Shown here: piece by piece, positions 18,060-59,232 of the stretch
Layout: every line of letters starts with the position of its first letter
How positions within the stretch are numbered: position 1 is the stretch's first letter
Virus record (IMG/VR): IMGVR_UViG_3300020477_001008
Coordinates: 178,647-242,646 of that record
Direction: 5' to 3' (one strand)
DNA length: 64,000 nucleotides
The notes under the pieces: generated by a model
The model's database searches: none
What the model saw: the letters and a program-made list of their open reading frames with translations, nothing else
Told to the model about the DNA's origin: nothing
Position numbers and translations under genes: made by a program

Positions 18060-18647
18060 ATGAGTAATTTAATTCCAATAGTAGTAGATCAAACTTCAAG
18101 AGGTGAAAGAAGTTATGACATCTACTCAAGACTTTTAAAAGAACGAATTGTATTTGTAACAGGTCCAATTGACGATTCAGTTTCAAGTGTAGTTTGTGCC
18201 CAATTATTATTTTTAGAATCACAAGATCCTAAAAAAGATATCTTTATGTACATTAATTCTCCAGGAGGTATTGTAACTTCTGGTTTAGCTATGTACGACA
18301 CAATGCAGTATGTAAAACCAGATATTTCAACTGTATGTATTGGACAGGCCGCTAGTGCTGGATCATTATTATTAATGGCAGGTACAAAAGGCAAAAGAAT
18401 TGCATTACCTCATAGTAAAGTAATGATACACCAACCATCAGGTGGATTTAGAGGACAAGCAACAGATATAGAGATTCACGCAAAAGATATATTAGATACT
18501 AAAGCAAGATTGAATCAACTATACGTTAAGCATACAGGGAAGGATCTTAAAACAATTGAACAAGCTATGGAAAGAGATAATTTTATGACAGCTCAACAAG
18601 CCATAGATTTTGGATTAATTGATAAGATAGAAGAAACCCGTGCTTAA
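18060..18647 (+). CDS. clpP: ATP-dependent Clp protease proteolytic subunit
   Basis: [51 protein letters not shown]. Confidence 0.98.
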
Positions 18648-21245: not shown

Positions 21246-21272
21246 TTAAATTACCAATAAATATAGTAAAAG

Positions 21273-35742: not shown

Positions 35743-36973
35743 AACTTTTTGCGTTGCCCCATTTTCTCATATGTGGTATCGTAATTCTGGAAACTATTAT
35801 GTCTTTAAACCTTGTTGTGAGGTAAGAGATAATGATGTTTATTATATTGATAAAAATAAAAATCATAAAGATAATGTAATTGCTGAATATTGGAATAGTG
35901 AATGGATTAAAGATATTCGAAAAACTATGTTGGAAAATAAACCGCATAAGATTTGTACAGATTGTTATAAAGTTGAAAAAACAACTGGACGTAAGCACAG
36001 AGATGATTATGCTGGATATTTAAAAGATAATACTATAGAGTTTAATGTTGATACTGGAAATAAATGGAATACACCATTAACACTTGATTATAGACCAAGT
36101 AACTTATGTAATTTAAAATGTAGAATGTGTGGCCCTGGTAGTAGTACTGAGTGGGCTAAAGAAATTGAAAGATATAAAAATTCACATTATCAAAATTTAG
36201 ATAAAATGGAAGATGGCACAGAAGTTATAATGATGTCAACGGACAATGCATTTATGTTTGATAGGGAAACAAATGCAGATGACCAATATAAAAATTTACC
36301 TTTAGACAACATAAGAAGAGCCGCTTTCTTAGGTGGAGAACCTTTATTAAATGAAGAAGTTTTTAATATAATGTCTAATTGGATAAAATTAGGAAAAGAT
36401 AATATTAAGATACAAATAACTACAAATGGTACAAGTTTTACAGATAGATGGTTAAAGTTATTTTCTAAATTCAAAAGAATAAAACTTGTAATTAGTTTAG
36501 ATGGTGTAGGTAATACTTTTGATTATATTAGAACAAATGCAAACTGGGATAAAGTTTTAGAAAATTGTAAAAATTTATCTAAATTAGATCATATTACAAT
36601 ATGTTTTAGTTATTGTATACAGATGTATAATGTTTTTGGTTTAGTTGAGATACTTGAATTTTTAAAGACTTGGAAACAACCAAAAGATGATACTCATATT
36701 TTTGAAGTAGTATTCCAAAATTTTCTTTCAACATCAATGTTAGATACAGAAGATTATAATAAAGTTATTTCAGAGTTACAAGATTATAGAAATAAAAATT
36801 TAGATAGAACTATTGAAGTGGATGAAATATTAGGTATTCTAAAGTATGATAGGAATAGAGTTGTATCAGATGCAGAGAAAAAGTATTTTATAAGTTATAC
36901 AAATAAACTAGACGAAGCTAGGAAAACTAGCCTTATTGATTTAAATCAGGATTTTAAAAAATACTTGATTTAA
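35720..36973 (+). CDS. Radical SAM protein, class A
   Basis: CVAPF...PCC...CTDC; SNLCNLKCRMC; LGGEP; SLDG. Confidence 0.92.
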   Translation: MQESDKPKTFCVAPFSHMWYRNSGNYYVFKPCCEVRDNDVYYIDKNKNHKDNVIAEYWNSEWIKDIRKTMLENKPHKICTDCYKVEKTTGRKHRDDYAGYLKDNTIEFNVDTGNKWNTPLTLDYRPSNLCNLKCRMCGPGSSTEWAKEIERYKNSHYQNLDKMEDGTEVIMMSTDNAFMFDRETNADDQYKNLPLDNIRRAAFLGGEPLLNEEVFNIMSNWIKLGKDNIKIQITTNGTSFTDRWLKLFSKFKRIKLVISLDGVGNTFDYIRTNANWDKVLENCKNLSKLDHITICFSYCIQMYNVFGLVEILEFLKTWKQPKDDTHIFEVVFQNFLSTSMLDTEDYNKVISELQDYRNKNLDRTIEVDEILGILKYDRNRVVSDAEKKYFISYTNKLDEARKTSLIDLNQDFKKYLI

Positions 36974-46962: not shown

Positions 46963-46987
46963 ACATAATTTTTATTTGTGTTATACT
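46960..46987 (+). promoter_or_regulatory. Sigma70-type promoter, leaderless spacing
   Basis: TAGACA-N16-TATACT (extended TGn), then N6-ATG 46994. Confidence 0.6.
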
Positions 46988-46993
46988 AGTAGT

Positions 46994-47542
46994 ATGACAC
47001 AGCACATTATGATCGATCTGGAGACGTTAGCCACAACTATAGATGCCAATATTCTAACAATAGGTGCTATAAAGTTTGACCCCAATGAAGATTATAGTAA
47101 CTGGAAGTGGGGAGAGTATCCTAAGACGCAGGTTTTCTATAGAAGAATTGATCCTGAATCTGGATCCAAAATTGGATTGAAAAATGATGATGAAACTATT
47201 GCTTGGTGGAGTCAGCAATCAGATGAAGTTAAAGCTGAAGCATTCGCTGAAGAAGAAAGATATCCAATTGACCAAGTAATGAAAGAGTTTTATAAATTTT
47301 GTTTGCCTGGAAAATATTTTTGGGCTCAAGGTGTAGCTTTTGATACTGTAATATGTGAACAAGTATTTAAAAAATTAAAACGTGGTGCTCCTTGGATGTT
47401 TTATAATTTACGTGATACTAGAACATTATTTGATTTAAAAGATCCAAATATGCCAAGTGCTAGACACCATCACGCATTATTTGATTGTTGGAGACAAATT
47501 GTAGGGGTACAAAATGTTTATAGACAAATCTACAAAAATTAA
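46994..47542 (+). CDS. DEDDh 3'-5' exonuclease
   Basis: IMIDLETL, QGVAFD, RDTRTL, HHALFD. Confidence 0.8.
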   Translation: MTQHIMIDLETLATTIDANILTIGAIKFDPNEDYSNWKWGEYPKTQVFYRRIDPESGSKIGLKNDDETIAWWSQQSDEVKAEAFAEEERYPIDQVMKEFYKFCLPGKYFWAQGVAFDTVICEQVFKKLKRGAPWMFYNLRDTRTLFDLKDPNMPSARHHHALFDCWRQIVGVQNVYRQIYKN

Positions 47543-48602
47543 AAGAATAGGTTTTTGTTGTAAATGGTTAAACGATCCTAGTGAAACTAGGGGTATGAAA
47601 ATCAATGCTAAAGATAGAGATCTAAATGGTAGAGCAACTACTATGCGTTGGTTACGAGAACATCCAGAAGAAGCAGAACAAAGACAATGGGACATTATGA
47701 ATCATAATGCCACAGCCGCTCGTAAAATGATTGAACGTGTAGCAACATTACCTTTAGAACGTAGAATGGTTAGATTAGGTAGTGAAATGTTACAAGGTTA
47801 CACAGAACCTAATTGGATTGATTGGTGGCAACAAAAAAATGTCCAAGATCATTTAGAAAAAATATTTGCACCTGTTGGTGATGCTTCAAGAAAACATAAT
47901 GTTAAGATAAGTTTTCATCCTGGGCAATTTTGTGTACTTGCAAGTGCCACACCTGATATTGTAGAACGTAGTATATTAGAATTTGAATATCACGCAGATA
48001 TGGCTCGTTGGATGGGTTTTGGCAAAAGCTTTCAAGATGGTTGCAAACTAAATGTACATATTTCAGGTAAGCAAGGTCCAGAAGGCATTATTAAAGTATT
48101 ACCCAAATTATCATCAGAAGCAAGAAATCTTATTACTATTGAAAATGATGAAATGGGTTGGGGCCTAGATGCTAGTTTACAATTAGAAAATCATTTAGCA
48201 TTAGTATTAGATATACATCATCATTGGATACGTGATGAAGAATATATACGACCTACAGATGATAGGGTTAAAAGAGTTATTGATAGTTGGCGTGGTCAAC
48301 GTCCTACTTTACATTATTCATATAGTAGAGATGAAGCACTTGCTCCTGCAAATTTAGGAAACAAAATGCATACAGAAATGCACAATATAAAAGATTTAAT
48401 AGCCAAAGGCTGTAAAAAACAAAAATTAAGAGCTCATAGCGACTTTTATCCTAATAAAAAAGCAAATGATTGGGCTTTAAGTTTTAATGAAGAATTTGAC
48501 ATACAGGCAGAGTCCAAGGGTAAAAATTTAGCTTCGCAGATGCTTTATGAACAGTCTATTGGTGTAAAACAGTTAAATGAAGAGTGGCAAGCCGTTTGTT
48601 AA
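47514..48602 (+). CDS. uvsE: UV-damage endonuclease (UvsE/UVDE)
   Basis: RIGFCC, RMVRLGSE, ISFHPGQF, NVHISG, TIENDE, LVLDIHHH, LHYS, RAHSD, QAESKGKN. Confidence 0.9.
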   Translation: MFIDKSTKIKRIGFCCKWLNDPSETRGMKINAKDRDLNGRATTMRWLREHPEEAEQRQWDIMNHNATAARKMIERVATLPLERRMVRLGSEMLQGYTEPNWIDWWQQKNVQDHLEKIFAPVGDASRKHNVKISFHPGQFCVLASATPDIVERSILEFEYHADMARWMGFGKSFQDGCKLNVHISGKQGPEGIIKVLPKLSSEARNLITIENDEMGWGLDASLQLENHLALVLDIHHHWIRDEEYIRPTDDRVKRVIDSWRGQRPTLHYSYSRDEALAPANLGNKMHTEMHNIKDLIAKGCKKQKLRAHSDFYPNKKANDWALSFNEEFDIQAESKGKNLASQMLYEQSIGVKQLNEEWQAVC

Positions 48603-48634
48603 CACAGAGCTAGGTACAGATAAATATTTGTGTT

Positions 48635-50209
48635 ATGAGAGCAACGCATTTAAATACGGCAGTTTTTGCATTTGGAAGGTTTAATCCACCTACAATTGGT
48701 CACGGTAGATTGGTAGAAGTTGTTAAAAAACAGCCAGGAACACCTTTCTTATTTTTAACTCATACGCAAAAACCAAAAACAGATCCATTAACATTTGAGC
48801 AAAAAGTAAAGTATGCTAAAGCTAGTTTTACTAATATTAAAATTGGTGATAGTTCTGTAAGAACATTAATACAAGCTTTACAAAAACTAGAGTCTTTAGG
48901 ATTCTTAAATGTAATAATGGTTGCTGGAGATGATAGACTACAACAGTTTACAGACTTTTTACCAAAGTACAATGGTAAAGATTATAGTTTTGAAAGTGTT
49001 AAAGTTGTTAGTGCTGGAGAAAGAGATCCAGATTCAGATGGTGCTATAGGTATGTCAGCAAGTAAAATGAAAGCTATGGCAGTTGCCGGTGACTTTAAAG
49101 GATTTCAAAAAGGAACTATTAATCCTGATATAGCAAAAAGTATGTATGATGATGTAAGAGCAGGTATGGGAATTACCGAAATTAAAGAAGCACAATATCC
49201 AATGCCAAAAGTTTATGTTGATATGGATGGTGTGTTAGCAGACTTCTTTACAGCTTTAGCAAAATTTAGAGGAGTTGACCATTGGAAAGATGGCGGCCAC
49301 GATAGTGTACAAGATTCAATTGAAGCAATTCAAGGAACAGATTTCTTTTCAACATTACCAGTATTCAATACCGCACCAAATATTATTAATAGTGTAAAAG
49401 CATTTACTGGTGGCGAATGGTATATTAATTCATCTCCATTAAGAGGAGATCACGAAAATTCTACAAAGCATAAATTAGATTGGCTTAAGAAGAATAATTT
49501 TGATCCAACAGATGTTGTTATAACAGGAAGAAAAGAATCGTATGCAATTAATAAACAAACAAATCAACCAAACATATTAATTGATGATAAGCCATCTAAT
49601 TTAGAAAGATGGACATCTAAAGGTGGTATTGGAATTAGATATCAAGCAACACAAGATAATCCAATGAGAGTACAAAAAGGTTTAGAAGTAATTAAAAATT
49701 ATTTAGAAAAAAATAATGGATTAATAGATCCTAAAGATGTTGCTGAATTAAATAAAGCAATTGATACAGGACAACTAATGGAGAATGGTGGAAAAATTAT
49801 TCCAGGTGTTAATACTACTCACGATGTTGGTCCTAATGAAATAAAAATACAAGCAAAGAAAATGGGATTTACAGTTAGTAAAGATGGAGTACCACCAATT
49901 ATGAAACCAAAAAATTTAAGAGAATATATTAAACTTATTGAAGAAAGAGATACAAGAGAATTGAAATTTCAAAATAGAGATGGAAAATATTCTATGTTGA
50001 GTTTACCAGGAACACAAAAATGGCAAAAAGATAAAAAGACTGCAGAACCAGGAACAGACAAATGGTTTAAAACTTGGAAAACATTACCATATTTAACTAA
50101 AGGTAGAAAGAATCATTATATGCTACCTATAAAAGAAAAGTTAAATGAGTTAGAAAATTTATTAAAAGAATACGGAGTTATTAAAAATGAAAATAAAAGA
50201 GATAGCTAA
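48635..50209 (+). CDS. Nucleotidyltransferase (cytidylyl/NMN adenylyltransferase-like) fused to HAD 5'-nucleotidase and extra modules
   Basis: FGRFNPPTIGH...SAGERDPD...MSASKMK, then VYVDMDGVLADF...ILIDD...GGIGI; ATAAATA-N8-ATG. Confidence 0.8.
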   Translation: MRATHLNTAVFAFGRFNPPTIGHGRLVEVVKKQPGTPFLFLTHTQKPKTDPLTFEQKVKYAKASFTNIKIGDSSVRTLIQALQKLESLGFLNVIMVAGDDRLQQFTDFLPKYNGKDYSFESVKVVSAGERDPDSDGAIGMSASKMKAMAVAGDFKGFQKGTINPDIAKSMYDDVRAGMGITEIKEAQYPMPKVYVDMDGVLADFFTALAKFRGVDHWKDGGHDSVQDSIEAIQGTDFFSTLPVFNTAPNIINSVKAFTGGEWYINSSPLRGDHENSTKHKLDWLKKNNFDPTDVVITGRKESYAINKQTNQPNILIDDKPSNLERWTSKGGIGIRYQATQDNPMRVQKGLEVIKNYLEKNNGLIDPKDVAELNKAIDTGQLMENGGKIIPGVNTTHDVGPNEIKIQAKKMGFTVSKDGVPPIMKPKNLREYIKLIEERDTRELKFQNRDGKYSMLSLPGTQKWQKDKKTAEPGTDKWFKTWKTLPYLTKGRKNHYMLPIKEKLNELENLLKEYGVIKNENKRDS

Positions 50210-50651
50210 AGATCCTTGTTGGAGCGGTTATAAACAAATTGGAATGAAAAAGAAAAATGGTAAACAAGTACCAAACTGTGTACCAAACGAATCAATTGAA
50301 GTTACATTAGATGATAATCAAGACTTTCACGAAGAATATGGATATCTAGGTTATAGTATTGATGAAAATGATTTATTTGAAGCTGAGTATCAAGGTAGAA
50401 CAGTTAAATTAAACAAACCAACACGTGGTGATGTTAAAAAGTTTAAAGTGTATGTCAAAGATCCAAAAACAGGAAACGTTAAAAAAGTTAATTTTGGACA
50501 CGGCGGTACAAGTGCTAAAAAAGCCGGACAGAAAACTATGAAAATTAAAAAGTCAAATCCTGAAAGAAGAAGATCTTTTAGAGCAAGACATAATTGTAAA
50601 AATCCAGGACCTAAAACAAAAGCAAGGTATTGGAGTTGTAAGGCTTGGTAA
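50187..50651 (+). CDS. Basic phage protein (DUF6321-like C-terminus), putative head protein
   Basis: MKIKEI N-terminus; KKVNFG...RRRSFRARHNC...KARYWSCKAW. Confidence 0.6.
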   Translation: MKIKEIAKDPCWSGYKQIGMKKKNGKQVPNCVPNESIEVTLDDNQDFHEEYGYLGYSIDENDLFEAEYQGRTVKLNKPTRGDVKKFKVYVKDPKTGNVKKVNFGHGGTSAKKAGQKTMKIKKSNPERRRSFRARHNCKNPGPKTKARYWSCKAW

Positions 50652-50652
50652 T

Positions 50653-50856
50653 ATGAGATTATACGAGATAGTTGAAGCTAGTTGGTATCAAGATGTAAGG
50701 TTACAGCCAAAGAGACTTACGACTAAAAAGCCTCGTAAACTTTTACCAAAACCTATAAGAAAAATAATTGTTAAAAGACCAAAAAGAATTAAAAGTCATA
50801 TGAAAACTGACTTTACTAGAAGAGCTGATAAATCATCTTGGTTAGCAGGAAAGTAA
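50653..50856 (+). CDS. Small basic protein with capsid-targeting-like N-terminus
   Basis: MRLYEIVE followed by a Lys/Arg-rich body. Confidence 0.6.
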   Translation: MRLYEIVEASWYQDVRLQPKRLTTKKPRKLLPKPIRKIIVKRPKRIKSHMKTDFTRRADKSSWLAGK

Positions 50857-50857
50857 A

Positions 50858-51556
50858 ATGAAACTTGCAGAATTTTTTTTAAAAGAAAACTTTGATTTAA
50901 CCGATTTGGTTTATTATGATGAAGTCCAACTTAAAAAGTCAGAGAAAAAAGTAGAAGAATATGAAGCACATCATTTAAAAGATGGTTGGCAAGATATTAA
51001 ATTAGAATCACCACCTGATAATAATAGTGATGAAACTAAAAATGAATTAGTTACTATTACTAACATACAAGAAAAAAGAACTGAAGAAGATGAAAATTCT
51101 ATTCACGTTTCTGATATGATGGACGCATTTCATTTTAGAGAATTTTTAAATGCAAAGAAAATAGATTATAGATCTAGCGAAATATCAGCTATTATTGATG
51201 ATGTATGGAAAGTAGTTAGAACATATAAAAATATGTATAATAGACCTAGGCCATATCAAATTGCTGAAGCATATAATATGGAGTTTGATACAATGTACGG
51301 TCAGAGTAACAAAACACCTGCTTATCCTAGTGGTCACAGTTGTGGTGCTAGAGTAGTTGCTGAATACCTATCAAAAAAATATCCTGAGCATAAAGAAAAA
51401 TTTTTAGAGATAGCTGAAAAAATTGGCATAGGAAGAATACAAGCTGGTTTTCATTATCCATCAGATCACGTAGCAGGAATAGATCTTGCATTAAAAGTTT
51501 TTCCTTATTTAGAAATATCAGAACAACATTTGGACGATTATAAAAATGAAAATTAA
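50858..51556 (+). CDS. PAP2-superfamily acid phosphatase
   Basis: KNMYNRPRP, PAYPSGH, GRIQAGFHYPSD; MKLAEFFLKE leader. Confidence 0.85.
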   Translation: MKLAEFFLKENFDLTDLVYYDEVQLKKSEKKVEEYEAHHLKDGWQDIKLESPPDNNSDETKNELVTITNIQEKRTEEDENSIHVSDMMDAFHFREFLNAKKIDYRSSEISAIIDDVWKVVRTYKNMYNRPRPYQIAEAYNMEFDTMYGQSNKTPAYPSGHSCGARVVAEYLSKKYPEHKEKFLEIAEKIGIGRIQAGFHYPSDHVAGIDLALKVFPYLEISEQHLDDYKNEN

Positions 51557-52016
51557 AGATATTACAAATGAATGGATTCCAATATATAGCACAATGAAAG
51601 CTTATGGTATGAAACGTGCTAAACATCCAGACGGTTCAAGATATTTTAAATTAGCTGAACAAGAAATTACAGATCAAGATTTACAGCAATTAGAAACGTA
51701 TGCTGATAGATTATTTGCATCATTAGGAATTGATGTTGCATTTTCAAAACATTTTAAAGACAGATTAAATGATCCAAGAAATAAAAAACCAATAACAATG
51801 GGAGAACTTACTAGGTTATTTAGACAGGTCTATAAACAACACGGTAAGCCAATTGCACAATTAGGTCCAGACGCAGAAGCAGTAATGAAAGATATGAAAA
51901 CTGATGTAAATGTTCCATTTGCTTTACAATGGGATGGCAACGAATTAGATTTAGTTGCAAAAACAGTTATGCGTAAACAAAACTTTGCAACGCCTAATCC
52001 TGAATTTAGAATTTAA
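51546..52016 (+). CDS. Hypothetical phage protein with capsid-targeting-like leader
   Basis: MKIKDITNE leader; FSKHFKDRLNDPRN...KTVMRK core. Confidence 0.65.
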   Translation: MKIKDITNEWIPIYSTMKAYGMKRAKHPDGSRYFKLAEQEITDQDLQQLETYADRLFASLGIDVAFSKHFKDRLNDPRNKKPITMGELTRLFRQVYKQHGKPIAQLGPDAEAVMKDMKTDVNVPFALQWDGNELDLVAKTVMRKQNFATPNPEFRI

Positions 52017-52026
52017 GAGAGTTTTT

Positions 52027-52230
52027 ATGAAATGGGCGTTGGTGATTTTATATTTTGTAGTGGGACCTGAAGGTGGTTGGTATGAAAGTGAACGTAAATT
52101 TTTTAAAACAGAAACAGAATGTAAAGAGCATATGGAGTTCTTTAATTCTATGCCAAAGCCAGGAACAATGACATCAAGATGTATTACTAGTACAGATGAA
52201 GGTTGGTGGAATAAAAAGGATAGTATATAA
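52027..52230 (+). CDS. Small secreted/membrane protein
   Basis: MKWALVILYFV, F.TETEC...C; start at ATG 52027. Confidence 0.55.
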   Translation: MKWALVILYFVVGPEGGWYESERKFFKTETECKEHMEFFNSMPKPGTMTSRCITSTDEGWWNKKDSI

Positions 52231-52556
52231 TGGAATTATTACTTAAAGCAATTATTGGTGGTATAGTAATTGCAACAGTTAGTACAGTTGGACAACGTTA
52301 TCCCACTATAGGAGCCTTTGTGTTAGGTGTACCATTAGCAACATTTGTGTCATTTATTTTTATGCATTATGCTGGAGTAGATGTACAAACATTTAAAACT
52401 ATTAGTATACAAACTGTATACTTTGTGTTAATTAGTTTATTATTCTTTCCTGTATTTGTTTTTATGTTACCGCAATATGGATTTTTAATGTCAATGCTTT
52501 CTGGAGTTGTAATTTCAGGTTCATTGATGCTATTATTATTAAAGTATGTCAGCTAA
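52230..52556 (+). CDS. Four-TM membrane protein (DUF3147-like)
   Basis: KAIIGGIVIATVS...YPTIGAFVLGVPL. Confidence 0.55.
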   Translation: MELLLKAIIGGIVIATVSTVGQRYPTIGAFVLGVPLATFVSFIFMHYAGVDVQTFKTISIQTVYFVLISLLFFPVFVFMLPQYGFLMSMLSGVVISGSLMLLLLKYVS

Positions 52557-52761
52557 TTTTGATAAAACACATAATCAGTTTTGTAAAGTTTACGTGGCTA
52601 ATGAGAAAAAGACTGATACATTTCATTGGGGATACTTTACTAAACGTATGGTTGATAAAGAGTTTAAAGAATTAGTTAAGTCAGACGAATGGGATGTTAT
52701 AGTAGTTGATGATATTACTAAAGAAGAATTTGATAAAATAATGGAACCATATACAGGATGA
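52546..52761 (+). CDS. Hypothetical protein
   Basis: Coupled ORF. Confidence 0.55.
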   Translation: MSANFDKTHNQFCKVYVANEKKTDTFHWGYFTKRMVDKEFKELVKSDEWDVIVVDDITKEEFDKIMEPYTG

Positions 52762-52988
52762 TTGATTGGGATAGACATAAAAGACCACAGTATGAACCAC
52801 CAAGTTGGATTGAGTGGCAACCAACTAATCCTATGAAATATTTGTTTATGCTTTGTCTTGTTCTTTGGATACTTCCAGTTTTATTTGGATTAATTTTAAC
52901 ACCCTTAGGTGCAATAGTTAATATTTTATTTGTTGATTGGGTTATGTATAAAAGAGATACTTCTTTTTTAAACCGTGATCGTGATTAA
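52758..52988 (+). CDS. Small membrane protein
   Basis: Two hydrophobic segments. Confidence 0.55.
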   Translation: MIDWDRHKRPQYEPPSWIEWQPTNPMKYLFMLCLVLWILPVLFGLILTPLGAIVNILFVDWVMYKRDTSFLNRDRD

Positions 52989-52996
52989 ATATTATT

Positions 52997-53542
52997 ATGC
53001 ACAAAGAATATTTTTTTCATATACCTAAACTAGATTTAAATGATGAACAAAGGTCTATATTACATAAAAAATATCTAGTTTCTAAAATTACACATAAAGG
53101 TTATAATAAAAATACGCATCAATATCTTAAAACATTTCATACTGAAATTGATGTTTTAAAAGACATTTATTCAAGTAAAATAATTAAGCAAATAGAAGAT
53201 TTATGTGAAGGATTACCTATAGATAAATTTAATAGACACACGTCATACGAATTTTTAAAAACAGAAGGTAAAGTTGAAATACATAGAGATCCTGTACGTT
53301 TAGCAGTTTTAGTTATTCCTTTGTTTAGTAAAGAAAACAATAAATTAGAATTTTGGAATGAAGAAGAAACAAAAATTGTTAATGAATTAGATTATGGTAC
53401 TAAAACCTATATAATGAGAACTCGTGTGCCTCATAGTGTATCAACTAGTAAAAAACCAAGGGTTTTTTGGCAGGGAAGTATTTTTACAAGAGATTTTGAT
53501 GAAGTGTTAAAAGATTATCGTCAAGGACGACTTTTTAAATAA
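52997..53542 (+). CDS. Cupin / 2OG-Fe(II) oxygenase-like protein
   Basis: IHRDPVR...PHSV...PRV; TTAAATA-N5-ATG. Confidence 0.5.
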   Translation: MHKEYFFHIPKLDLNDEQRSILHKKYLVSKITHKGYNKNTHQYLKTFHTEIDVLKDIYSSKIIKQIEDLCEGLPIDKFNRHTSYEFLKTEGKVEIHRDPVRLAVLVIPLFSKENNKLEFWNEEETKIVNELDYGTKTYIMRTRVPHSVSTSKKPRVFWQGSIFTRDFDEVLKDYRQGRLFK

Positions 53543-53550
53543 ATATTGTT

Positions 53551-53754
53551 ATGATAGAATGGATAAAAAAATTGTTCGCATCGCAGACTTACGAACTAAT
53601 TATAGAGCATTTAGGAACAGTAAAAAATTATACAGTTACTAAGGTTTATACATTAAATGATCGTACTGCTCATTTTAAAGCAATAGATGGCGAAAAATAT
53701 ACATTAAGAAGTGCTGATAAAATGAGTTGGTCTTTAAGAAAGATTACAAAATGA
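53551..53754 (+). CDS. Hypothetical protein
   Basis: ATAAATA-N5-ATG. Confidence 0.6.
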   Translation: MIEWIKKLFASQTYELIIEHLGTVKNYTVTKVYTLNDRTAHFKAIDGEKYTLRSADKMSWSLRKITK

Positions 53755-53951
53755 GTAAATTTAGAGTAATTGAAAAATCAAATAAAACGTTTATTCTTAA
53801 ACAAGAGAACGTAATTGAAGCTATTGCTAACTTTCTTGCTGATGCTGGTATGCTAGAAGAAGACGAAACTGAAGGTAAAATGACTTATAAAATGAACAAA
53901 GATGCTTCAATAACAGTTGAATTGCACTTTGCAAAAACCACTGTAAACTAA
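53751..53951 (+). CDS. Hypothetical protein
   Basis: ATGA-coupled to upstream ORF. Confidence 0.55.
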   Translation: MSKFRVIEKSNKTFILKQENVIEAIANFLADAGMLEEDETEGKMTYKMNKDASITVELHFAKTTVN

Positions 53952-53974
53952 AATAAACACTAAATACAGCTATT

Positions 53975-54475
53975 ATGCGTTATTCGGAAATAATTAATGA
54001 GTCAATGAGCTTTTCAGCAGGACATTCTGAGAAAAGAGAAGACGGAAACTACTGGATAAGCGACACAGATTCAGGTGATAGATATGCTCCAGAATTTTAT
54101 AAGAATATGGACAAGTATTCTAAAGATCTTGATTTAGAGCCACCTGAAAACCCAGATTATAAAGAAGAATTAGATTTATCATTATCAAACGCAAGTATGC
54201 GTGAAGTATTTCACGAATTAGGATATCCTACAGATTTAGAGGACAGAGCACCTTTTCCAATAGATGAATTTATTGGTAGAACTACACAATGGTTACAAAA
54301 AGCAATTGGCAAGCCATCTCCAGAGCAAAAACCAGAAATAGTTAAACAACCATATGGGGCTACAATGATTAGTGGTGGCAAACCAGAAGGATATTTTAAT
54401 AGAGTTATCAAAAGAATGAATGAGATTGCTAGAGCTGGGAAACAAAATGGTGCAACTCACGTGTGGGCAAGTTAG
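53975..54475 (+). CDS. Hypothetical protein with capsid-targeting-like leader
   Basis: MRYSEIINE; CTAAATA-N8-ATG. Confidence 0.65.
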   Translation: MRYSEIINESMSFSAGHSEKREDGNYWISDTDSGDRYAPEFYKNMDKYSKDLDLEPPENPDYKEELDLSLSNASMREVFHELGYPTDLEDRAPFPIDEFIGRTTQWLQKAIGKPSPEQKPEIVKQPYGATMISGGKPEGYFNRVIKRMNEIARAGKQNGATHVWAS

Positions 54476-54487
54476 GTAAATATTACT

Positions 54488-56500
54488 ATGAGACTTACAA
54501 AACTTTTTGAAGCATTAGATAAACAAGCTAAAAAGCCAAATCCAATGGCTAAAGCATTATCAGATCCTAAATTTAAGCCAAAAACAGAAACAGATAAAAA
54601 GAAAGAAGCTAAAAAAGGTTATCAAAAGCATAAAGGTAAGATAGATGAAGCAGGCTACGAAGGACAAGTAGAGCCAACACACCACGATTTTAAAAATGTA
54701 AATTTAGATTCAATTAAAAAAATTATAGCTGATAGAGATTTATCAGCAGATGCTGAAGAAGTAGATGGTGCTATTAGAGTACACACATATGATACTGATA
54801 GAAAATCAGTAGCAAAATCATTAGGAATCAATGAAGAACTTTATATTAATGGTATGAAAGATGTTGAAGATGTTATTAATATGATTAAAGACACACTTGA
54901 TGATGGTCAAATTGATAGTGCTAAAGATTATTTAGAACAGTTTAAAGAATATCTACACTCAAAAGGAATTACAGATTCAGTTGATCCTATTAGACACGAT
55001 CAAGATGCTAAAGAAGAACTTGCAAAAGAAATTTATGCTAACAATGAATATTACCAAAGTGAGTATGAAGATTGGGAAGCATTTATGAATTCAGATGATT
55101 TTGAAGAAGAAAATATGAGACTATGGAGTAAGTTTGGTGAATCAAAAATTAAACCATATGTGTCTATGTATAATGATAAAGACACAGGTAAGATGACGTA
55201 TGACGTATTAGATAGCGATGGAAAATCAGCATTTAAAACTAAAGACAAGAAAGCGGCTATGGGTTTCTTTAATAAAAACTTTGATGCTTTAAGAAAAGGT
55301 TTTGATTCATTAAAAGATGAAAATGTTTCAGCTATAGCTAAAGCAATAAATTCAGCTTATGATCCAACTTTTGGAGATACTGATAATAGATTTATGAAAA
55401 CTGTAAAAAAATTAAATCCTTTTAAAAGTGATGAATATAAAAAATTGCAAATGGCAAAACAAGCTGAAAGAGATAATCCAAATTGGAAAGGTGAGCCTGG
55501 CGACCAAGCTGGTGAAACTTTACCAAATGGAAGAAGAGCATATTACAGAAATGTAAATGGACAGAAGCAAAGAGTAGATATTTACAAAGACATATATCCA
55601 AGTGAAGCAGTTGCAGAATTTGATGGTCCAGATGAAACTAAAGATAATGCAGACTTTACAGATAAAGAAATTAAAATGGCGTTTGGTGTTTTAAATGATC
55701 CAAGATTTAAAGGTGGTAATTACAGTGGTGCTGTTAATGTTATTAATAAAATTGCACCAGGTTTAGCAGATCACCCATCAGTAGCAAATGCTTTAAAAAG
55801 AACAAATGAAAATTTAACTGAAGATCAAATGACAGATGAAGTTAAAGCAATATTAGACAAACACGGTATTAAAAGTACAGACGATATTGAATATGGTGGA
55901 GAAGCTTTTAGTGATTTATTTGATTATTTCTCAAGTGATCCTGATGAAATGCCATATGGTGTTCAAAAAGCAAGAACAGGAATGCCAGATGAATGGATTG
56001 CAAATAGAATTTTAGATTTAGGTTTACTTAAAGAAGTAGAGCCACAAATGAATCCAGAACCTAATAGACCACAACCTACTACTCCACAAAGAGGACCAGA
56101 TGATACAAGATTAAAAACAAATGTTTCTTTACAACAAATTGCTAACTTATTTCCTGGAATAGAAGATAAGCAAACATTTTTACAATCATTGTTAAGATTA
56201 AAGCAAGGGCAAAAAATTTCAATGCAACACGCATATACTTTAGCTAATGCATTTAAAGAATTAATTTCAAAAGATCCACAAGACACACAAAGAGCAATGA
56301 TACAATTAAAAAAAATCGGAGCTCAAGAGTCAATAAACGAAACTAAAGAAGATGATGCACCTGGTTATCCACACCAATATAAAACTATGAATCAAGGTAA
56401 GACGCCAGAAGAAGCATTACAAGATGAAAGAATTGAAGATAGTAAAGAATTAGAACGAATTCAAATGTTAGCAGGGTTATTTCATAGCGAGAAGGAATAA
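54488..56500 (+). CDS. Large modular putative head-internal polyprotein
   Basis: MRLTKLFE leader; unrelated short modules separated by (I/L/V)xE sites; ends ELERIQMLAGL. Confidence 0.65.
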   Translation: MRLTKLFEALDKQAKKPNPMAKALSDPKFKPKTETDKKKEAKKGYQKHKGKIDEAGYEGQVEPTHHDFKNVNLDSIKKIIADRDLSADAEEVDGAIRVHTYDTDRKSVAKSLGINEELYINGMKDVEDVINMIKDTLDDGQIDSAKDYLEQFKEYLHSKGITDSVDPIRHDQDAKEELAKEIYANNEYYQSEYEDWEAFMNSDDFEEENMRLWSKFGESKIKPYVSMYNDKDTGKMTYDVLDSDGKSAFKTKDKKAAMGFFNKNFDALRKGFDSLKDENVSAIAKAINSAYDPTFGDTDNRFMKTVKKLNPFKSDEYKKLQMAKQAERDNPNWKGEPGDQAGETLPNGRRAYYRNVNGQKQRVDIYKDIYPSEAVAEFDGPDETKDNADFTDKEIKMAFGVLNDPRFKGGNYSGAVNVINKIAPGLADHPSVANALKRTNENLTEDQMTDEVKAILDKHGIKSTDDIEYGGEAFSDLFDYFSSDPDEMPYGVQKARTGMPDEWIANRILDLGLLKEVEPQMNPEPNRPQPTTPQRGPDDTRLKTNVSLQQIANLFPGIEDKQTFLQSLLRLKQGQKISMQHAYTLANAFKELISKDPQDTQRAMIQLKKIGAQESINETKEDDAPGYPHQYKTMNQGKTPEEALQDERIEDSKELERIQMLAGLFHSEKE

Positions 56501-56503
56501 GCT

Positions 56504-57142
56504 ATGGACCTTGAATATCTAAAAAAATTAGCAGGGATAGGTGAGCAGAATCAAATGAAAAGTTTGGCTCAAGAAATGGCCGAACGTAGAAGAGACATTA
56601 TGAAAAATGTAATGAAAGAACAAAAAGAAGAACAATTGGAATTACAAGCACTTCCTTACAAAATTACAGATTTAGCACCAGTACTATCAAAAGAAAATGT
56701 TGATTATCATTATGATATATTAAGTAGAGGATACGTAAACAGATATAATAATAATGAAGGCGATTCAGACTTTAATTATGGTGGTGCAAAACTACACAAT
56801 TTATGGTGGCAACAATTTAAACCAGCAAAAGAAACATCAAATTACAGCGGTCCTATAAAGCAAACTATAGATGCTAATTATGGTGATTTAAAAGGTTTAG
56901 AAGAAAAATTAGTTGAAGCCGCAATGACTATACAAGGATCAGGATGGGTTTATCTAACTAAAACTGGAACAATTAAAACAACACCAAATCAAAGTTACAA
57001 ACCAGATGTGTTTATGCCTATAGATATGTGGGAACACAGCTTCACGGACTATGTACCAGCCAAAGACGCAAAGGTTAAATACATTAAAGCAGTTCTTAAA
57101 TTAATAGATTGGAATGCGATTAATAGAAGGTTAGAAGGATGA
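56504..57142 (+). CDS. sod: Fe/Mn superoxide dismutase with N-terminal extension
   Basis: LPY...YHY, LHNLWW, QGSGW, PNQ, DMWEH: all four metal ligands present; Gly-Gly and NQ suggest Mn-type. Confidence 0.9.
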   Translation: MDLEYLKKLAGIGEQNQMKSLAQEMAERRRDIMKNVMKEQKEEQLELQALPYKITDLAPVLSKENVDYHYDILSRGYVNRYNNNEGDSDFNYGGAKLHNLWWQQFKPAKETSNYSGPIKQTIDANYGDLKGLEEKLVEAAMTIQGSGWVYLTKTGTIKTTPNQSYKPDVFMPIDMWEHSFTDYVPAKDAKVKYIKAVLKLIDWNAINRRLEG

Positions 57143-57957
57143 ATTTAAAAGATTTTACTAAAGAAGATATTACACCTGCAGATTTAAAAAGGCTAGGTGC
57201 TTCTGAGCCTCAAATTTATATGCACAAAGATGGCAAAACAATAATGGTGCCTAAATCTAAAGAACAAGAATATGCAAAACAAGGTTATCAAAAGTCTTCA
57301 TTAAGAGCTGAAACAAAAGTAAATGAAAGAATGCCTGCGTCAGTTATCAAGCATAAAGAAAGATTAGCACATATGACGGATCAAGAACTTGCTGATAGAC
57401 ACGGTGATACTGATGAAGAAAGATTAAGACAAATGGCTTGGAGACACGGCTATGGTAAAATGAGTTCACATTATGTTGACAGAATTCGTAGAGCTAAAGA
57501 AAAAGTTGAAGGCTTACAAGAAGACTATGCAAAAATGACAAAAGATTTAATTATTAAATTAGTTAAAAAAGGTAAAACAGATGATGAAATTCAACAAGCA
57601 ACAGGGGAAACTGGTTTGCGAATTAGACTTATTAGAAAAAGTGTCGACTACGATAAAAAAGAAGAAGCAATTAAAATAGCAGAAGAAAACGCAAGAAGAG
57701 ATTTTATGAAAAAAGCGGCCGCTGGAATGGGTGCAGTAGCATTGGGAACAATGGCACCATCAGTAGCTTGGCCAGATGAACCACCTGAAAATTTTGATTT
57801 TATGGATCAGTTCTTTAGTGATAAAATTTTAAATGATCCAAAATATAAAGAGTTTAAATTAAAAGGAAATGATTTTTTAAATATGATGAAAGATTTAGAA
57901 AAGAAATGGGAAAAAGATAAACAAAAAAATAAAGATGATGGTTCAGTAGAGGTATAA
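57139..57957 (+). CDS. Modular putative head protein with internal twin-arginine signal
   Basis: MNLKDFTKE leader; ARRDFMKKAAAGMGAVALGTMAPSVA at 57691-57768. Confidence 0.65.
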   Translation: MNLKDFTKEDITPADLKRLGASEPQIYMHKDGKTIMVPKSKEQEYAKQGYQKSSLRAETKVNERMPASVIKHKERLAHMTDQELADRHGDTDEERLRQMAWRHGYGKMSSHYVDRIRRAKEKVEGLQEDYAKMTKDLIIKLVKKGKTDDEIQQATGETGLRIRLIRKSVDYDKKEEAIKIAEENARRDFMKKAAAGMGAVALGTMAPSVAWPDEPPENFDFMDQFFSDKILNDPKYKEFKLKGNDFLNMMKDLEKKWEKDKQKNKDDGSVEV

Positions 57958-57958
57958 T

Positions 57959-58210
57959 ATGTTAATATCAGAAATTTGCAATAAAAAATTAAAAGAAGAT
58001 GCCACAGCAGGAGCAACTACTTCAGGTGTAGTAGCTTCAGTTAATATGCCGATGTTTACAGGTAAAAGAGGTGGCGATCATTATGCAACAGCCAGAAAGG
58101 CTATTGATCCAATGGGTAAAATCTTTAAGAAAAAGAATTTAAGAAAAGCACCACACAAATTAAAAGATAGTGTTGACAAATTAGTATATACAAAGGAAAT
58201 CACTAAATAA
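57959..58210 (+). CDS. Small putative head protein
   Basis: MLISEICNKKLKE leader, then DATAGATTSGVVASV. Confidence 0.6.
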   Translation: MLISEICNKKLKEDATAGATTSGVVASVNMPMFTGKRGGDHYATARKAIDPMGKIFKKKNLRKAPHKLKDSVDKLVYTKEITK

Positions 58211-58239
58211 CAAAGCAGAGATAGGTGAGCGGAATTATT

Positions 58240-58725
58240 ATGAAAAACAATATAAGAAAATGGAAACAATTAATTGAAAGCTGTGGTGAAATAAACCACA
58301 CTGATTCTGGCGAACACGACCACGAAGCTTCAATGGCACGTGGACAATTATATCATATAGCCAAAGATGCAATTAACTTAATCAAATTTATTGAAAAAGG
58401 TGAAAACCTAGAAGGTTGGGTTGCATCTAAAATTACTAAAGCAAAAGAAAATATATCAGTAGTTGCAGACTATATTGAGTCAGAAAAAACTGTTAACAAT
58501 AACGATTCACCTGAAGAATATACAAAAGTACCTGAAGAAATGCCTACAGAAGAAGATAGCAAATATACAAGTATGAACAAATACGGTATCTATACTACAA
58601 AAAGTAAAGATGGTGATTTTCAAGTTTGGCAACACGACAAACATTTAGGCTCTTTTAAAACTATTCAAGATGTAGATAAGTTCTTAACTACACATCTAAA
58701 CAAAGAATCCGTTGACAATCAATAA
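58240..58725 (+). CDS. Putative head protein
   Basis: KQLIE leader; DHEASMARGQL...LEGWVASKITKA module; CTAAATA at 58203. Confidence 0.6.
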   Translation: MKNNIRKWKQLIESCGEINHTDSGEHDHEASMARGQLYHIAKDAINLIKFIEKGENLEGWVASKITKAKENISVVADYIESEKTVNNNDSPEEYTKVPEEMPTEEDSKYTSMNKYGIYTTKSKDGDFQVWQHDKHLGSFKTIQDVDKFLTTHLNKESVDNQ

Positions 58726-58926: not shown

Positions 58927-59232
58927 ATGACACTGACTATTAATGTTATAGATAGAGACGGAAATAATCATAAAATTGAAACATTTGAAGGCCAATCTAT
59001 AGCTCAAGCAATTGTTCAACATATAAAACCAAGTGAATTTATGATATGTGGAGGTTGTTGTGCTTGTGGTACGTGTGCTGTTGATATTGATAAAAAAGGC
59101 GAACTACCTGAAATGGATGTTGATGAAGATGCATTATTAGATACAGTAGATGATAGAAATCCTAATAGTAGATTAAGTTGCCAAGTACCAATGACTAAAG
59201 AGCTTGATGGAGTTACAGTAAAGATAATATGA
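58927..59232 (+). CDS. fdx: [2Fe-2S] ferredoxin, adrenodoxin/Fdx type
   Basis: CGGCCACGTC...EDALLD...SRLSCQ. Confidence 0.9.
   Translation: MTLTINVIDRDGNNHKIETFEGQSIAQAIVQHIKPSEFMICGGCCACGTCAVDIDKKGELPEMDVDEDALLDTVDDRNPNSRLSCQVPMTKELDGVTVKII

What the first reader, a model, noticed from the sequence alone, without database searches (positions are those of the whole stretch)
48635..57142. Enzymes in the cargo block: nucleotidyltransferase-HAD fusion, PAP2 phosphatase, SOD
Seen: 48635 joins an HxGH-type nucleotidyltransferase and a HAD domain at an IKE junction; PAP2 has a CTS-like leader; SOD has an N-terminal LKKLAGI..E extension echoing MLAGL at the end of the upstream gene. Known: some phages rebuild NAD+ to counter NAD-depleting defences, and nucleotide second messengers drive several immune systems. 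Inference: injected enzymes that act before gene expression on nucleotide/NAD pools, signalling molecules and ROS.
Basis: inference. Interest (0 to 1): 0.6.

Follow-up and report, generated by a model that had tools for sequence, protein, structure and literature searches.

The report
Address-tagged enzymes for phage capsid loading
A giant marine T4-type phage encodes a superoxide dismutase, an acid phosphatase and a nucleotidyltransferase-nucleotidase fusion whose ends carry short address peptides like those T4 uses to load proteins into its head, so these enzymes are probably packed in the capsid and delivered with the DNA, although no virion data exist for this phage itself.

Summary
Window 48635-57142 encodes three enzymes with intact catalytic motifs: a TxGH nucleotidyltransferase fused to an NT5C-type HAD nucleotidase, a soluble class-A (PAP2) acid phosphatase, and a Fe/Mn superoxide dismutase. 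The window is the end of a 242-kb fragment of a giant myovirus of the PA5oct/Rak2 clade, with T4-type portal, S77 prohead protease and gp23 capsid genes.

The block shows two portable address peptides.
- **N-terminal leader.** M-[RK]-Φ-x-E-Φ..E has the Φ-x-E-Φ core and [LI]xE processing pattern of the T4 capsid targeting sequence. It is strongly enriched in this block and in related loci.
- **Scaffold-tail motif.** D[IL]xx[IL]K[KR]LAG[LI] is the invariant C-terminal tail of the scaffold protein. It recurs at the N-terminus of SOD and the C-terminus of two large proteins.

Homologues of each enzyme carry these addresses in interchangeable dialects. The fusion's junction is a conserved Φ-x-E site in the only disordered stretch of the model.

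Published virion proteomics detected the PA5oct SOD homologue and a cyanophage cytidylyltransferase that has a T4-type leader. Packaging is therefore well supported but indirect. The proposed NAD or anti-defence roles remain untested.

The parts
48621..48626 (+). TAAATA promoter-like hexamer 14 nt upstream of the fusion gene
   Evidence: The same hexamer sits at -11 to -14 from the start codon of about 40 genes of the contig, including the portal and virion structural genes. It is not exclusive to structural genes.
48635..50209 (+). 524-aa fusion: TxGH nucleotidyltransferase (aa 1-178), disordered junction, NT5C-type HAD nucleotidase (aa 190-360), C-terminal extension (aa about 380-524)
   Evidence: Pfam PF01467 and PF06941, PHROG cytidyltransferase and deoxyribonucleotidase families. 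Invariant T20, G22, H23, S141, D196, D198, K300, D317, D318. AF2 model pLDDT 87.6. Folds resemble PPAT/NadM and 5'(3')-deoxyribonucleotidases. The N-terminus MRATHL.. is a shortened version of the MHLRELFLKE-type leader seen in 390-aa homologues.
49181..49189 (+). I183-K184-E185 junction, a candidate prohead-protease ([LIV]xE) site between the two enzymes
   Evidence: Homologues keep a hydrophobic residue at -13 and an invariant E at -11 from the catalytic Asp, although linker length varies from about 15 to 130 aa. This is the only stretch with pLDDT below 50 (aa 182-187). Stand-alone HADs of the same genome lack the element.
50187..50651 (+). 154-aa basic protein (pI 9.8) with leader MKIKEIAKD
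   Evidence: PHROG 7595, function unknown.
50653..50856 (+). 67-aa very basic protein (pI 11.3, 31% K+R) with leader MRLYEIVEA; resembles T4 internal proteins in size and charge
50858..51556 (+). 232-aa soluble class-A acid phosphatase (PAP2) with a 10-aa leader (nt 50858-50887) in place of a signal peptide
   Evidence: PF01569 at 46.9 bits. KX6RP, PSGH and RX5HX3D motifs at aa 124, 157 and 193, conserved in about 100 homologues, which carry CTS-like leaders in several dialects; in the complete sequences printed, only a few, such as a TM-like P0222 N-terminus, do not. AF2 pLDDT 93.3, with aa 1-10 a detached low-confidence helix. Fold matches Pseudomonas acid phosphatase, PhoN and PhoC at TM 0.6-0.7.
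51546..52016 (+). 156-aa protein with leader MKIKDITNE
   Evidence: PHROG 23027, function unknown.
53975..54475 (+). 166-aa acidic protein with leader MRYSEIINE, preceded by TAAATA at -14
   Evidence: Conserved with the same leader in related loci.
54488..56500 (+). 670-aa protein with leader MRLTKLFEA, DUF7230 (aa 17-51) and a C-terminal scaffold-tail-like motif (aa 658-664, nt 56459-56479)
56504..57142 (+). 212-aa Fe/Mn superoxide dismutase. Address D2-E14 (nt 56507-56545) equals the scaffold C-terminal motif and ends in I-G-E. A helical spacer of about 30 aa follows, then the SOD fold at aa 46-210.
   Evidence: PF00081 and PF02777. Four metal ligands kept against 1ues. All 120 best relatives have an N-terminal extension, 69 with the LAG address and the others with CTS-like leaders. 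The PA5oct homologue was MS-positive in virions.
57139..57957 (+). 272-aa protein with leader MNLKDFTKE and an internal twin-arginine (TAT) signal-like segment (aa 186-211)
   Evidence: TIGR01409 at 25.9 bits against a cutoff of 16.7. Pfam UCR_Fe-S_N TAT signal. Relatives have the leader directly followed by the TAT-like segment.
57959..58210 (+). 83-aa basic protein (pI 10.0) with leader MLISEICNK
   Evidence: Conserved as MLIAEIFN.. in related loci.

Best explanation
The three enzymes, and at least seven neighbouring proteins, are most likely internal head proteins, that is capsid cargo, of a giant T4-type myovirus.

Proposed mechanism:
- Shown: each protein carries a short terminal address.
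  - One address is an N-terminal amphipathic leader, M-[RK]-Φ-x-E-Φ..E. It has the same Φ-x-E-Φ core and [LI]xE end as the T4 capsid targeting sequence.
  - The other is an 11-residue copy of the scaffold protein's invariant C-terminal tail, D[IL]xx[IL]K[KR]LAG[LI].
- Inferred: during prohead assembly the address docks the protein to the scaffolding core or the inner capsid surface.
- Inferred: the S77 (gp21-type) prohead protease then cuts after [LIV]xE. This frees the mature enzyme inside the head and splits the nucleotidyltransferase from the HAD nucleotidase at the conserved, disordered I-K-E junction.
- Inferred by analogy with T4 IPI*, Alt and CTS fusions: the cargo leaves the head with the DNA. 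The infected cell would then receive a superoxide dismutase, a broad-range class-A acid phosphatase, a 5'-nucleotidase and a PPAT/NMNAT-like nucleotidyltransferase before any phage gene is expressed.

The substrates, and the benefit to the phage, are not established.
For: Phage identity and machinery:
- The phage has T4-type head machinery: portal, Peptidase_S77 protease (91 bits), Gp23 capsid protein (323 bits) and a scaffold in the gp22 position.
- The T4 record shows MKTYQEFIAE|A (IPII, IPIII) and MKTFKEF.. (IPI). According to PMC9026906, targeting rests on residues 4 and 7 and processing on residues 8 and 10.

Leader enrichment:
- 7 of 18 against 7 of 297 ORFs; the PSSM gives p = 3.8e-5; the leader is also present in 5-10 of about 20-27 plus-strand ORFs in most of the related loci examined.
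- Leader-bearing ORFs elsewhere on the contig sit beside head genes, for example the 66-aa ORF between portal and protease.

Addresses in homologues:
- PAP2 homologues show CTS-like leaders in at least three dialects, including the T4-IP type.
- SOD relatives always have an extension, carrying either the LAG address or a leader.
- Nucleotidyltransferase homologues start MHLRELFLKE (marine fusions), MKKFSAFLSE|A (Syn9 gp184) or MKNFSSFLTE|A (S-CREM2 ORF154).

Scaffold tail:
- The tail is invariant in 17 homologues down to 42% identity, while the residues before it vary.
- The same motif is terminal in all 4 proteome occurrences.

Virion proteomics in relatives:
- PA5oct: the SOD homologue is MS-positive. 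A 498-aa protein with an N-terminal ..ILRLAGV is MS-positive. Six of 10 leader-like N-termini are MS-positive, against 93 of 445 overall. The scaffold homologue is MS-negative, as expected for a degraded scaffold.
- S-CREM2: the cytidylyltransferase was detected in CsCl-purified virions, and the authors note frequent detection of cytidyltransferases in cyanophage virions.

Structure models:
- The junction is the only disordered stretch of the fusion model.
- The PAP2 leader is a detached helix in front of a complete phosphatase fold.
Against: - There are no virion or N-terminal processing data for this uncultured phage.
- The fusion in this window has only a vestigial leader (MRATHL.. merging into strand 1), with no [LI]xE after it.
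- The PA5oct nucleotidyltransferase homologue was MS-negative.
- The PA5oct MS set also contains obvious non-structural enzymes such as thymidylate synthase and a ligase, so co-purification is possible. The S-CREM2 authors state the same caveat.
- The leader patterns were defined after seeing the data, and the related loci are partly orthologous, so the replication is not fully independent.
- [LI]xE is common, at 1.2 per 100 aa.
- The block is interrupted by small membrane and other proteins that lack addresses (52027-53951).
- The promoter-like TAAATA motif is shared with non-structural genes.
- Docking of the LAG peptide to the capsid protein could not be modelled.
Confidence: 0.58

Rival explanations
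1. The enzymes are ordinary auxiliary metabolic genes that act in the cytoplasm of the infected cell after expression. SOD would protect the phage's many Fe-S and radical-SAM enzymes. The fusion would act in nucleotide or NAD metabolism. PAP2 would act in phosphate scavenging. The N-terminal peptides would serve some other purpose, such as oligomerisation, stability or regulation.
For: - The window also encodes cysteine desulfurase, Nfu, ferredoxin and many radical SAM/SPASM paralogues, plus ClpXP/ClpS and Hsp70, so cytoplasmic superoxide protection is plausible.
- NadE is encoded on the contig.
- The PA5oct nucleotidyltransferase homologue is absent from the virion MS set.
- MS detection of enzymes can reflect co-purification.
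Against: This does not explain several observations:
- unrelated enzymes share the same terminal peptides;
- one enzyme family swaps between three address types;
- the SOD address copies the scaffold tail;
- a periplasmic-type acid phosphatase has lost its signal peptide in favour of the leader;
- leader-bearing proteins are MS-positive in PA5oct above background.
Confidence: 0.25
2. The proteins are packaged but act inside or on the virion rather than as injected effectors. For example, SOD might protect packaged DNA from photo-oxidative damage in surface water, and the basic proteins might condense DNA. Alternatively they could be assembly factors that are degraded and lost.
For: - The addresses and the protease imply prohead entry but say nothing about ejection.
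- Several block proteins are small and very basic (pI 9.8-11.3), like the DNA-associated T4 internal proteins.
- The scaffold homologue itself is not retained in PA5oct virions.
Against: - In T4, CTS-tagged proteins are ejected with the DNA (PMC3012670 and PMC9026906).
- A chlorovirus virion-packaged SOD is proposed to lower superoxide in the infected cell (PMC7019647).
- A nucleotidyltransferase or phosphatase has no obvious substrate inside a capsid.
Confidence: 0.12
3. The shared N-terminal pattern is a nucleic-acid or translation feature rather than a protein signal, for example codon preferences after the start codon of leaderless or tightly coupled genes.
For: - Many genes have a promoter-like TAAATA only 5-8 nt before the ATG, which suggests leaderless mRNAs.
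- The genome is 30% G+C, which favours K, I, N and E codons.
Against: - Most leader genes lack the TAAATA motif and are translationally coupled.
- Conservation is physico-chemical (L/I/F/Y at position 3; E/D at 5; L/I/F at 6), with varied codons (TTA/CTT/CTA, AGA/CGT, GAA/GAG).
- The pattern recurs in T4, Syn9, S-CREM2 and PA5oct, whose base compositions differ.
- The internal-Met control rate is 0.7%.
Confidence: 0.05

Closest known systems
T4 internal proteins IPI/IPII/IPIII and Alt with the capsid targeting sequence (CTS), processed by the gp21 prohead protease
   Same: - A short N-terminal propeptide with two hydrophobic residues three apart around a Glu, ending in [LI]xE followed by a small residue.
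- A phage with an S77 protease, a gp22-position scaffold and a gp23 capsid protein.
- Highly diverse mature parts behind a conserved address.
- Some cargo is small and very basic.
   Different: - The leader is one residue shorter and usually starts M-[RK]-Φ.
- The cargo includes housekeeping-type enzymes (Fe/Mn SOD, class-A acid phosphatase, nucleotidyltransferase-nucleotidase fusion) rather than small anti-restriction proteins or an ADP-ribosyltransferase.
- A second address, copied from the scaffold C-terminus, is used at either protein end.
- Nothing has been shown experimentally for this phage.
Virion-associated cytidylyltransferase of T4-like cyanophages (S-CREM2 ORF154, Syn9 gp184 family)
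   Same: The nucleotidyltransferase domain is homologous, at 36-42% identity. The cyanophage proteins carry T4-type leaders, and ORF154 was detected in purified virions.
   Different: - Here the domain is fused to an NT5C-type HAD nucleotidase and a 145-aa extension.
- The leader is reduced.
- The published work does not link virion presence to a targeting sequence.
Virion-packaged Cu/Zn SOD of chlorovirus PBCV-1
   Same: A late-expressed viral SOD is packaged in the particle and is proposed to lower superoxide early in infection (PMC7019647).
   Different: The SOD family is different (Cu/Zn against Fe/Mn), the virus is eukaryotic, and no address peptide is known.
Scaffold-mediated or cargo-loading-peptide systems (P22 scaffold C-terminus binding coat; encapsulin cargo-loading peptides)
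   Same: A short terminal peptide, shared by a scaffold and by cargo proteins, could dock to the inner face of an HK97-fold shell. This comparison rests on general knowledge and was not tested here.
   Different: No binding data or model exist for the LAG motif. The partner could be the capsid protein, the scaffold core or the portal.
Bacterial class-A non-specific acid phosphatases (PhoN, PhoC, Pseudomonas acid phosphatase)
   Same: The fold matches over about 200 residues at TM 0.6-0.7, and all three PAP2 motifs are present.
   Different: There is no Sec signal peptide; a CTS-like leader takes its place. Sequence identity is about 20%, and the NCBIfam PhoC score is far below its cutoff.

Membership tests
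T4-type CTS-addressed internal head proteins | N-terminal propeptide of about 10-20 aa with hydrophobic residues at i and i+3 and a terminal [LI]xE processing site | tested here: met
   Met for PAP2 (MKLAEFFLKE) and for ORFs 50653, 53975 and 54488, whose leaders end in [LI]xE; ORFs 50187, 51546, 57139 and 57959 have the Φ-x-[ED]-Φ core but no [LI]xE at the leader end (50187 and 57959 have [LI]xE only at residues 3-5 or 11-13), compared with the T4 record. SOD uses the LAG address, which ends in I-G-E. The fusion in this window has only a vestigial leader.
T4-type CTS-addressed internal head proteins | The phage encodes a gp21-family prohead protease and a scaffolding core | tested here: met
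   Peptidase_S77 at 91 bits, PHROG 207, a scaffold in the gp22 position, and Gp23 at 323 bits.
T4-type CTS-addressed internal head proteins | The protein is physically present in mature heads in processed form | not testable with these tools
   Only indirect evidence exists: the PA5oct SOD homologue and the S-CREM2 cytidylyltransferase are MS-positive, and the PA5oct nucleotidyltransferase homologue is MS-negative.
T4-type CTS-addressed internal head proteins | Ejection into the host with the DNA | not testable with these tools
   Rests on analogy with T4 only.
Fe/Mn superoxide dismutase | Both SOD domains and the four metal ligands (His, His, Asp, His) | tested here: met
   PF00081 and PF02777. 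The ligands align with H27, H74, D157 and H161 of 1ues. The loop between the N-domain helices is about 20 aa shorter.
Class-A acid phosphatase (PAP2 superfamily) | KX6RP, PSGH and SRX5HX3D motifs on a soluble all-alpha fold | tested here: met
   Motifs at aa 124, 157 and 193, invariant in 41 sequences. Fold matches 7f17, 2a96 and 9qcj.
Class-A acid phosphatase (PAP2 superfamily) | Sec signal peptide and periplasmic location | tested here: not met
   The N-terminus is the acidic amphipathic leader, with no hydrophobic signal peptide.
(H/T)xGH nucleotidyltransferases (PF01467) | (H/T)xGH box and a C-terminal ISSTxxR-like motif on a Rossmann fold | tested here: met
   T20-I-G-H23 and S141-A-S-K are invariant or nearly so. 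The fold resembles PPAT and NadM.
NMN/NaMN adenylyltransferase; phage NAD+ reconstitution pathways | NMNAT-specific identity and partner enzymes (Nampt, or ADPR-PP synthetase and Namat) | tested here: inconclusive
   Structure matches PPAT at least as well as NMNAT. No curated family reaches its cutoff. NadE is present. No NAPRTase/Nampt is found on a contig that is only 55% complete.
HAD 5'(3')-deoxyribonucleotidase (NT5C) | DxDGV nucleophile motif, Ser/Thr, Lys and DD motifs on the HAD fold | tested here: met
   D196, D198, S267, K300 and D317-D318 are invariant. The fold matches 3bwv and human cdN/mdN. The Pfam score of 24.5 is just under the 24.8 cutoff.

The most novel reading that the evidence does not exclude
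Giant marine T4-type phages may run a modular cargo-loading system with two interchangeable addresses. One is a CTS-like N-terminal leader. The other is a mimic of the scaffold's C-terminal tail, usable at either end of a protein. Together they would load a whole toolkit of enzymes into the head: Fe/Mn SOD, class-A acid phosphatase, a nucleotidyltransferase and a 5'-nucleotidase released from one precursor by the prohead protease, and even a protein carrying a TAT export signal. The toolkit would be delivered into the host ahead of gene expression. This would be a phage counterpart of encapsulin cargo-loading peptides, and it would broaden the T4 internal-protein concept from small anti-restriction proteins to metabolic enzymes.
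Probability: 0.4. Interest if true: 0.8.

Novelty: new variant of a known kind. Interest (0 to 1): 0.66.

Why it matters
If true, three things follow.
- The protein content of a phage head can be read from genome sequence by its address peptides. That opens uncultured giant phages to prediction of their injected proteome.
- It would explain why cytidylyltransferases keep turning up in cyanophage virion proteomes.
- It would show that phages deliver ROS-detoxifying and nucleotide-modifying enzymes at the moment of DNA entry.

The addresses themselves, a 10-residue leader and an 11-residue scaffold-tail peptide, would be usable tags for loading foreign proteins into large capsids. The conserved protease site inside the fusion would be a case of a phage polyprotein that matures inside the prohead.

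Tried and rejected
- **DNA similarity.** Megablast of the region against isolated phages found nothing.
- **PDB sequence searches.** Searches with the nucleotidyltransferase and HAD domains gave only marginal hits, so folds were used instead.
- **Scaffold in related contigs.** The related contigs found through SOD are fragments without the head module, so the scaffold could not be compared there. A separate scan supplied scaffold homologues.
- **Late-promoter test.** TATAAATA/TAAATA is strikingly positioned before start codons. It also precedes RNR-like, cysteine-desulfurase-like and radical-SAM genes, so I dropped it as proof of late co-expression.
- **Literature searches.** 'cytitidyltransferase' and 'Syn9 gp184' found nothing. 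'Capsid targeting sequence' plus 'cyanophage' found only a T4 review. The MIJ3 paper analysed only four gel bands. No PA5oct supplementary MS table is held.
- **NAD-pathway check.** NadE is present and Nampt/NAPRTase was not found, but the contig is incomplete, so the result is inconclusive.
- **Wasted and failed calls.** One Pfam call was wasted on a 20-residue placeholder.
- **N-degron idea.** I considered the leader as an N-degron for the phage ClpS/ClpXP and rejected it: the N-termini start with Met-Arg/Lys, and the predicted new N-termini (A, S, N, D) are not N-end-rule residues.


Full report
**What the window is.** The 64-kb window is the last quarter of a 242,646-bp IMG/VR viral contig. 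CheckV rates the contig 55% complete. It has about 30% G+C, and in this region almost all genes lie on the plus strand.

The contig carries a T4-type head module:
- a portal (PHROG 213);
- a prohead protease of the gp21 family (PHROG 207; Pfam Peptidase_S77, 91 bits);
- a 363-aa protein in the gp22 scaffold position;
- a Gp23-family major capsid protein (323 bits).

The scaffold's closest cultured relatives are the giant myoviruses PA5oct, Atu_ph07, CBB, GAP32, 121Q/PBECO4, K64-1 and SCTP-2. The related metagenomic contigs are fragments of phages estimated at roughly 350-530 kb.

**The observation.** The three enzymes are real and look catalytically competent.

ORF 48635-50209 (524 aa) joins a cytidylyltransferase-like nucleotidyltransferase to an NT5C-type HAD domain.
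- In an alignment of 41 homologues the TxGH box, the SxxK motif and the four HAD motifs are invariant.
- The AlphaFold model (pLDDT 87.6) shows two folded domains.
- The HAD domain matches 5'(3')-deoxyribonucleotidases.
- The nucleotidyltransferase matches PPAT and NadM-type NMNAT about equally, so its substrate is open.

ORF 50858-51556 (232 aa) has all three PAP2 motifs. Its model (pLDDT 93.3) matches the soluble periplasmic class-A acid phosphatases (Pseudomonas enzyme, PhoN, PhoC) over about 200 residues.

ORF 56504-57142 (212 aa) is a Fe/Mn SOD that keeps its four metal ligands.

**A first address: a CTS-like leader.** Many proteins of the block begin M-[RK]-Φ-x-[ED]-Φ, followed within a few residues by Glu and a small residue. 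The T4 record gives MKTYQEFIAE|A for IPII and IPIII and MKTFKEF.. for IPI. A review reports that the first ten residues suffice for head targeting, that residues 4 and 7 matter for targeting, and that residues 8 and 10 matter for processing (PMC9026906; PMC3012670). The pattern here has the same Φ-x-E-Φ core and the same [LI]xE end.

The enrichment is strong:
- 7 of 18 ORFs in 48635-58725 match, against 7 of 297 elsewhere. Internal Met positions match at 0.7%.
- That regex was written after seeing the data. I therefore trained a PSSM on all plus-strand N-termini within 8 kb of SOD in six related loci, with no motif selection. Block ORFs score higher than the rest (Mann-Whitney p = 3.8e-5). Eight of 18 against 11 of 297 exceed the 99th percentile of the internal-Met control.
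- The best-scoring ORFs outside the block lie next to head genes. One is a 66-aa ORF between portal and protease, where T4 has its core proteins gp67 and gp68.
- In related loci, 5-10 of about 20-27 plus-strand ORFs carry the leader.

The codons behind the conserved residues vary, and the substitutions are conservative. This argues for selection on the peptide rather than on the DNA.

**A second address: the scaffold tail.** The scaffold ends ..DIVNIKRLAGLRS. In 17 homologues down to 42% identity the last dozen residues are essentially invariant, while the preceding 25 vary.

The same 11-residue pattern appears in three other places:
- it opens the SOD (MDLEYLKKLAGIGE);
- it closes the 670-aa protein just upstream of SOD;
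- it closes a 677-aa protein of a PHROG annotated as a virion structural protein.

[IL]xxLAG[ILV] occurs four times in the 315-ORF proteome, always within 20 residues of a terminus. None of 300 shuffles reaches that. In SOD the motif is followed by I-G-E, again a gp21-type site.

**Comparative evidence that the addresses are modules.**
- The roughly 100 PAP2 homologues found show leaders in three dialects, including the T4-IP dialect; a few printed ones do not. The bacterial signal peptide of this enzyme family is gone.
- All 120 best SOD relatives have an extension before the start of the fold. Sixty-nine have the LAG address and the others have leader variants. In some loci the LAG peptide is a separate small ORF just upstream.
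- The nucleotidyltransferase-HAD fusion is abundant in marine metagenomes. The 390-aa forms begin MHLRELFLKE. Syn9 gp184 begins MKKFSAFLSE|A and S-CREM2 ORF154 begins MKNFSSFLTE|A. The clade that includes this window has a shortened form running straight into the first strand.

The junction keeps a hydrophobic residue and an invariant Glu at -13 and -11 from the catalytic Asp, whatever the linker length. Stand-alone HADs of the same genome lack it. It is the only disordered stretch of the model. That fits processing of one precursor into two enzymes.

**Experimental evidence from relatives.** The PA5oct record marks 93 of 445 proteins as detected by MS in virion preparations (PMC7318152).
- The SOD homologue is among them. 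It starts MNDSIKKYISIAE|A.
- So is a 498-aa protein that starts with ..ILRLAGV.
- Six of ten leader-like N-termini are detected, including the small protein between portal and protease.
- The scaffold homologue, which ends ..LRRLAGIK, is not detected, as expected for a degraded scaffold.
- The PA5oct nucleotidyltransferase homologue is not detected.

In cyanophage S-CREM2 the cytidylyltransferase was detected in CsCl-purified virions. The authors remark that such enzymes are frequently seen in cyanophage virions, and they caution about co-purification (PMC10665884). They do not connect this with a targeting sequence. I found no paper that does.

**Most likely mechanism.** Shown: intact enzymes; two recurrent terminal peptides; a T4-type protease and scaffold; a conserved, exposed Φ-x-E site between the two halves of the fusion. 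Inferred:
- the peptides dock the proteins to the scaffolding core or the inner capsid wall;
- the protease removes the addresses and splits the fusion;
- the enzymes leave with the DNA, as T4 internal proteins do.

A virion-packaged SOD has a precedent in chlorovirus PBCV-1 (PMC7019647).

What the enzymes do in the cell is open. A nucleotidase and a broad acid phosphatase would attack phosphomonoesters of nucleotides. The nucleotidyltransferase could be an NMN/NaMN adenylyltransferase working with the phage NadE, but that is conjecture.

**Rivals.**
- The main rival is that these are ordinary cytoplasmic auxiliary genes. The window is rich in Fe-S assembly and radical-SAM genes that a SOD would protect. 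This view does not explain the shared, swappable addresses.
- A second rival is packaging without ejection, or action inside the virion.
- A nucleic-acid-level explanation of the leader is unlikely.

**Limits.** The phage is uncultured, and all packaging evidence is by homology and pattern. The motifs are short. The related loci are partly orthologous. The PA5oct MS list includes clear non-structural enzymes. The fusion in this window has the weakest address of the three enzymes. The planned docking prediction could not be run.

**Verdict.** The finding is best filed as a new variant of the T4 internal-protein/CTS system, with enzymes as cargo and a second, scaffold-derived address. It is a concrete hypothesis that can be tested in PA5oct or in cyanophages.

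Noticed in passing
Whole contig, e.g. window 48621-48626, 53961-53966, 54477-54482; genome 109330 (portal), 138933, 171007: The hexamer TAAATA (often TATAAATA, like a T4 late promoter) starts exactly 11 nt before the start codon in 21 genes and 12-14 nt before it in 18 more. Full TATAAATA occurs only 15 times in 242 kb, 13 of them within 60 nt upstream of an ORF. If it is a -10 element, the spacing implies leaderless or nearly leaderless mRNAs.
   Followed up: partly
window 57139-57957 (aa 186-211); L005 10642-10959: A leader-bearing protein contains a twin-arginine (TAT) signal-like segment (TIGR01409 at 25.9 bits against a cutoff of 16.7). In relatives the leader is directly followed by this segment. 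A capsid-addressed protein with an export signal would be odd and might be aimed at the host periplasm.
   Followed up: partly
window 1615-2907, 11600-13492, 15838-16140, 18060-18647: The phage encodes ClpX, Hsp70/DnaK (919 bits), ClpS and ClpP. PA5oct likewise has ClpX and ClpS right next to its SOD homologue.
   Followed up: partly
window 4463-5668, 17166-17726, 20169-36973, 58927-59232: The window encodes cysteine desulfurase, Nfu/NifU and a 2Fe-2S ferredoxin. It also holds a long series of paralogous radical SAM/SPASM-like genes, with more copies elsewhere on the contig. This is an unusually heavy investment in Fe-S enzymes.
   Followed up: partly
genome 26403-27110 (outside the window; locus L069): NAD synthetase NadE (PF02540, 170 bits) is encoded by the phage. 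No NAPRTase/Nampt family gene was found on this 55%-complete contig.
   Followed up: partly
window 46976-48602: Directly upstream of the fusion gene lie an Rv2179c-like 3'-5' exonuclease and a UvdE UV-damage endonuclease, which suggests DNA repair in a sunlit habitat.
   Followed up: no
window 50187-50651 (aa 9-33); window 49790-49900 (fusion aa about 386-420); related loci L014 10525, L015 8511: Short mobile modules recur in different proteins of the block and its relatives. One is a Cys-containing DPCW..GY..G.K..GK.VPNCVP segment. Another is a GVNTT.DVGP.EI..QA.K.GF.V.KDG.PP segment. A third is lysine-rich C-terminal tails. Their function is unknown.
   Followed up: no
PA5oct MK797984: 82921-83142, 105688-105900, 127321-128817, 152875-153120, 156341-157528, 242891-243316, 261410-262099: In PA5oct, proteins with leader-like or LAG-type termini are annotated as MS-detected structural proteins of unknown role. 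They are candidates for internal head proteins of that cultured phage.
   Followed up: partly
window 52027-53951: The run of address-bearing genes is interrupted by about eight small ORFs without addresses. Several are hydrophobic, for example 52230-52556, which looks like a multi-pass membrane protein. Their relation to the block is unexplained.
   Followed up: no
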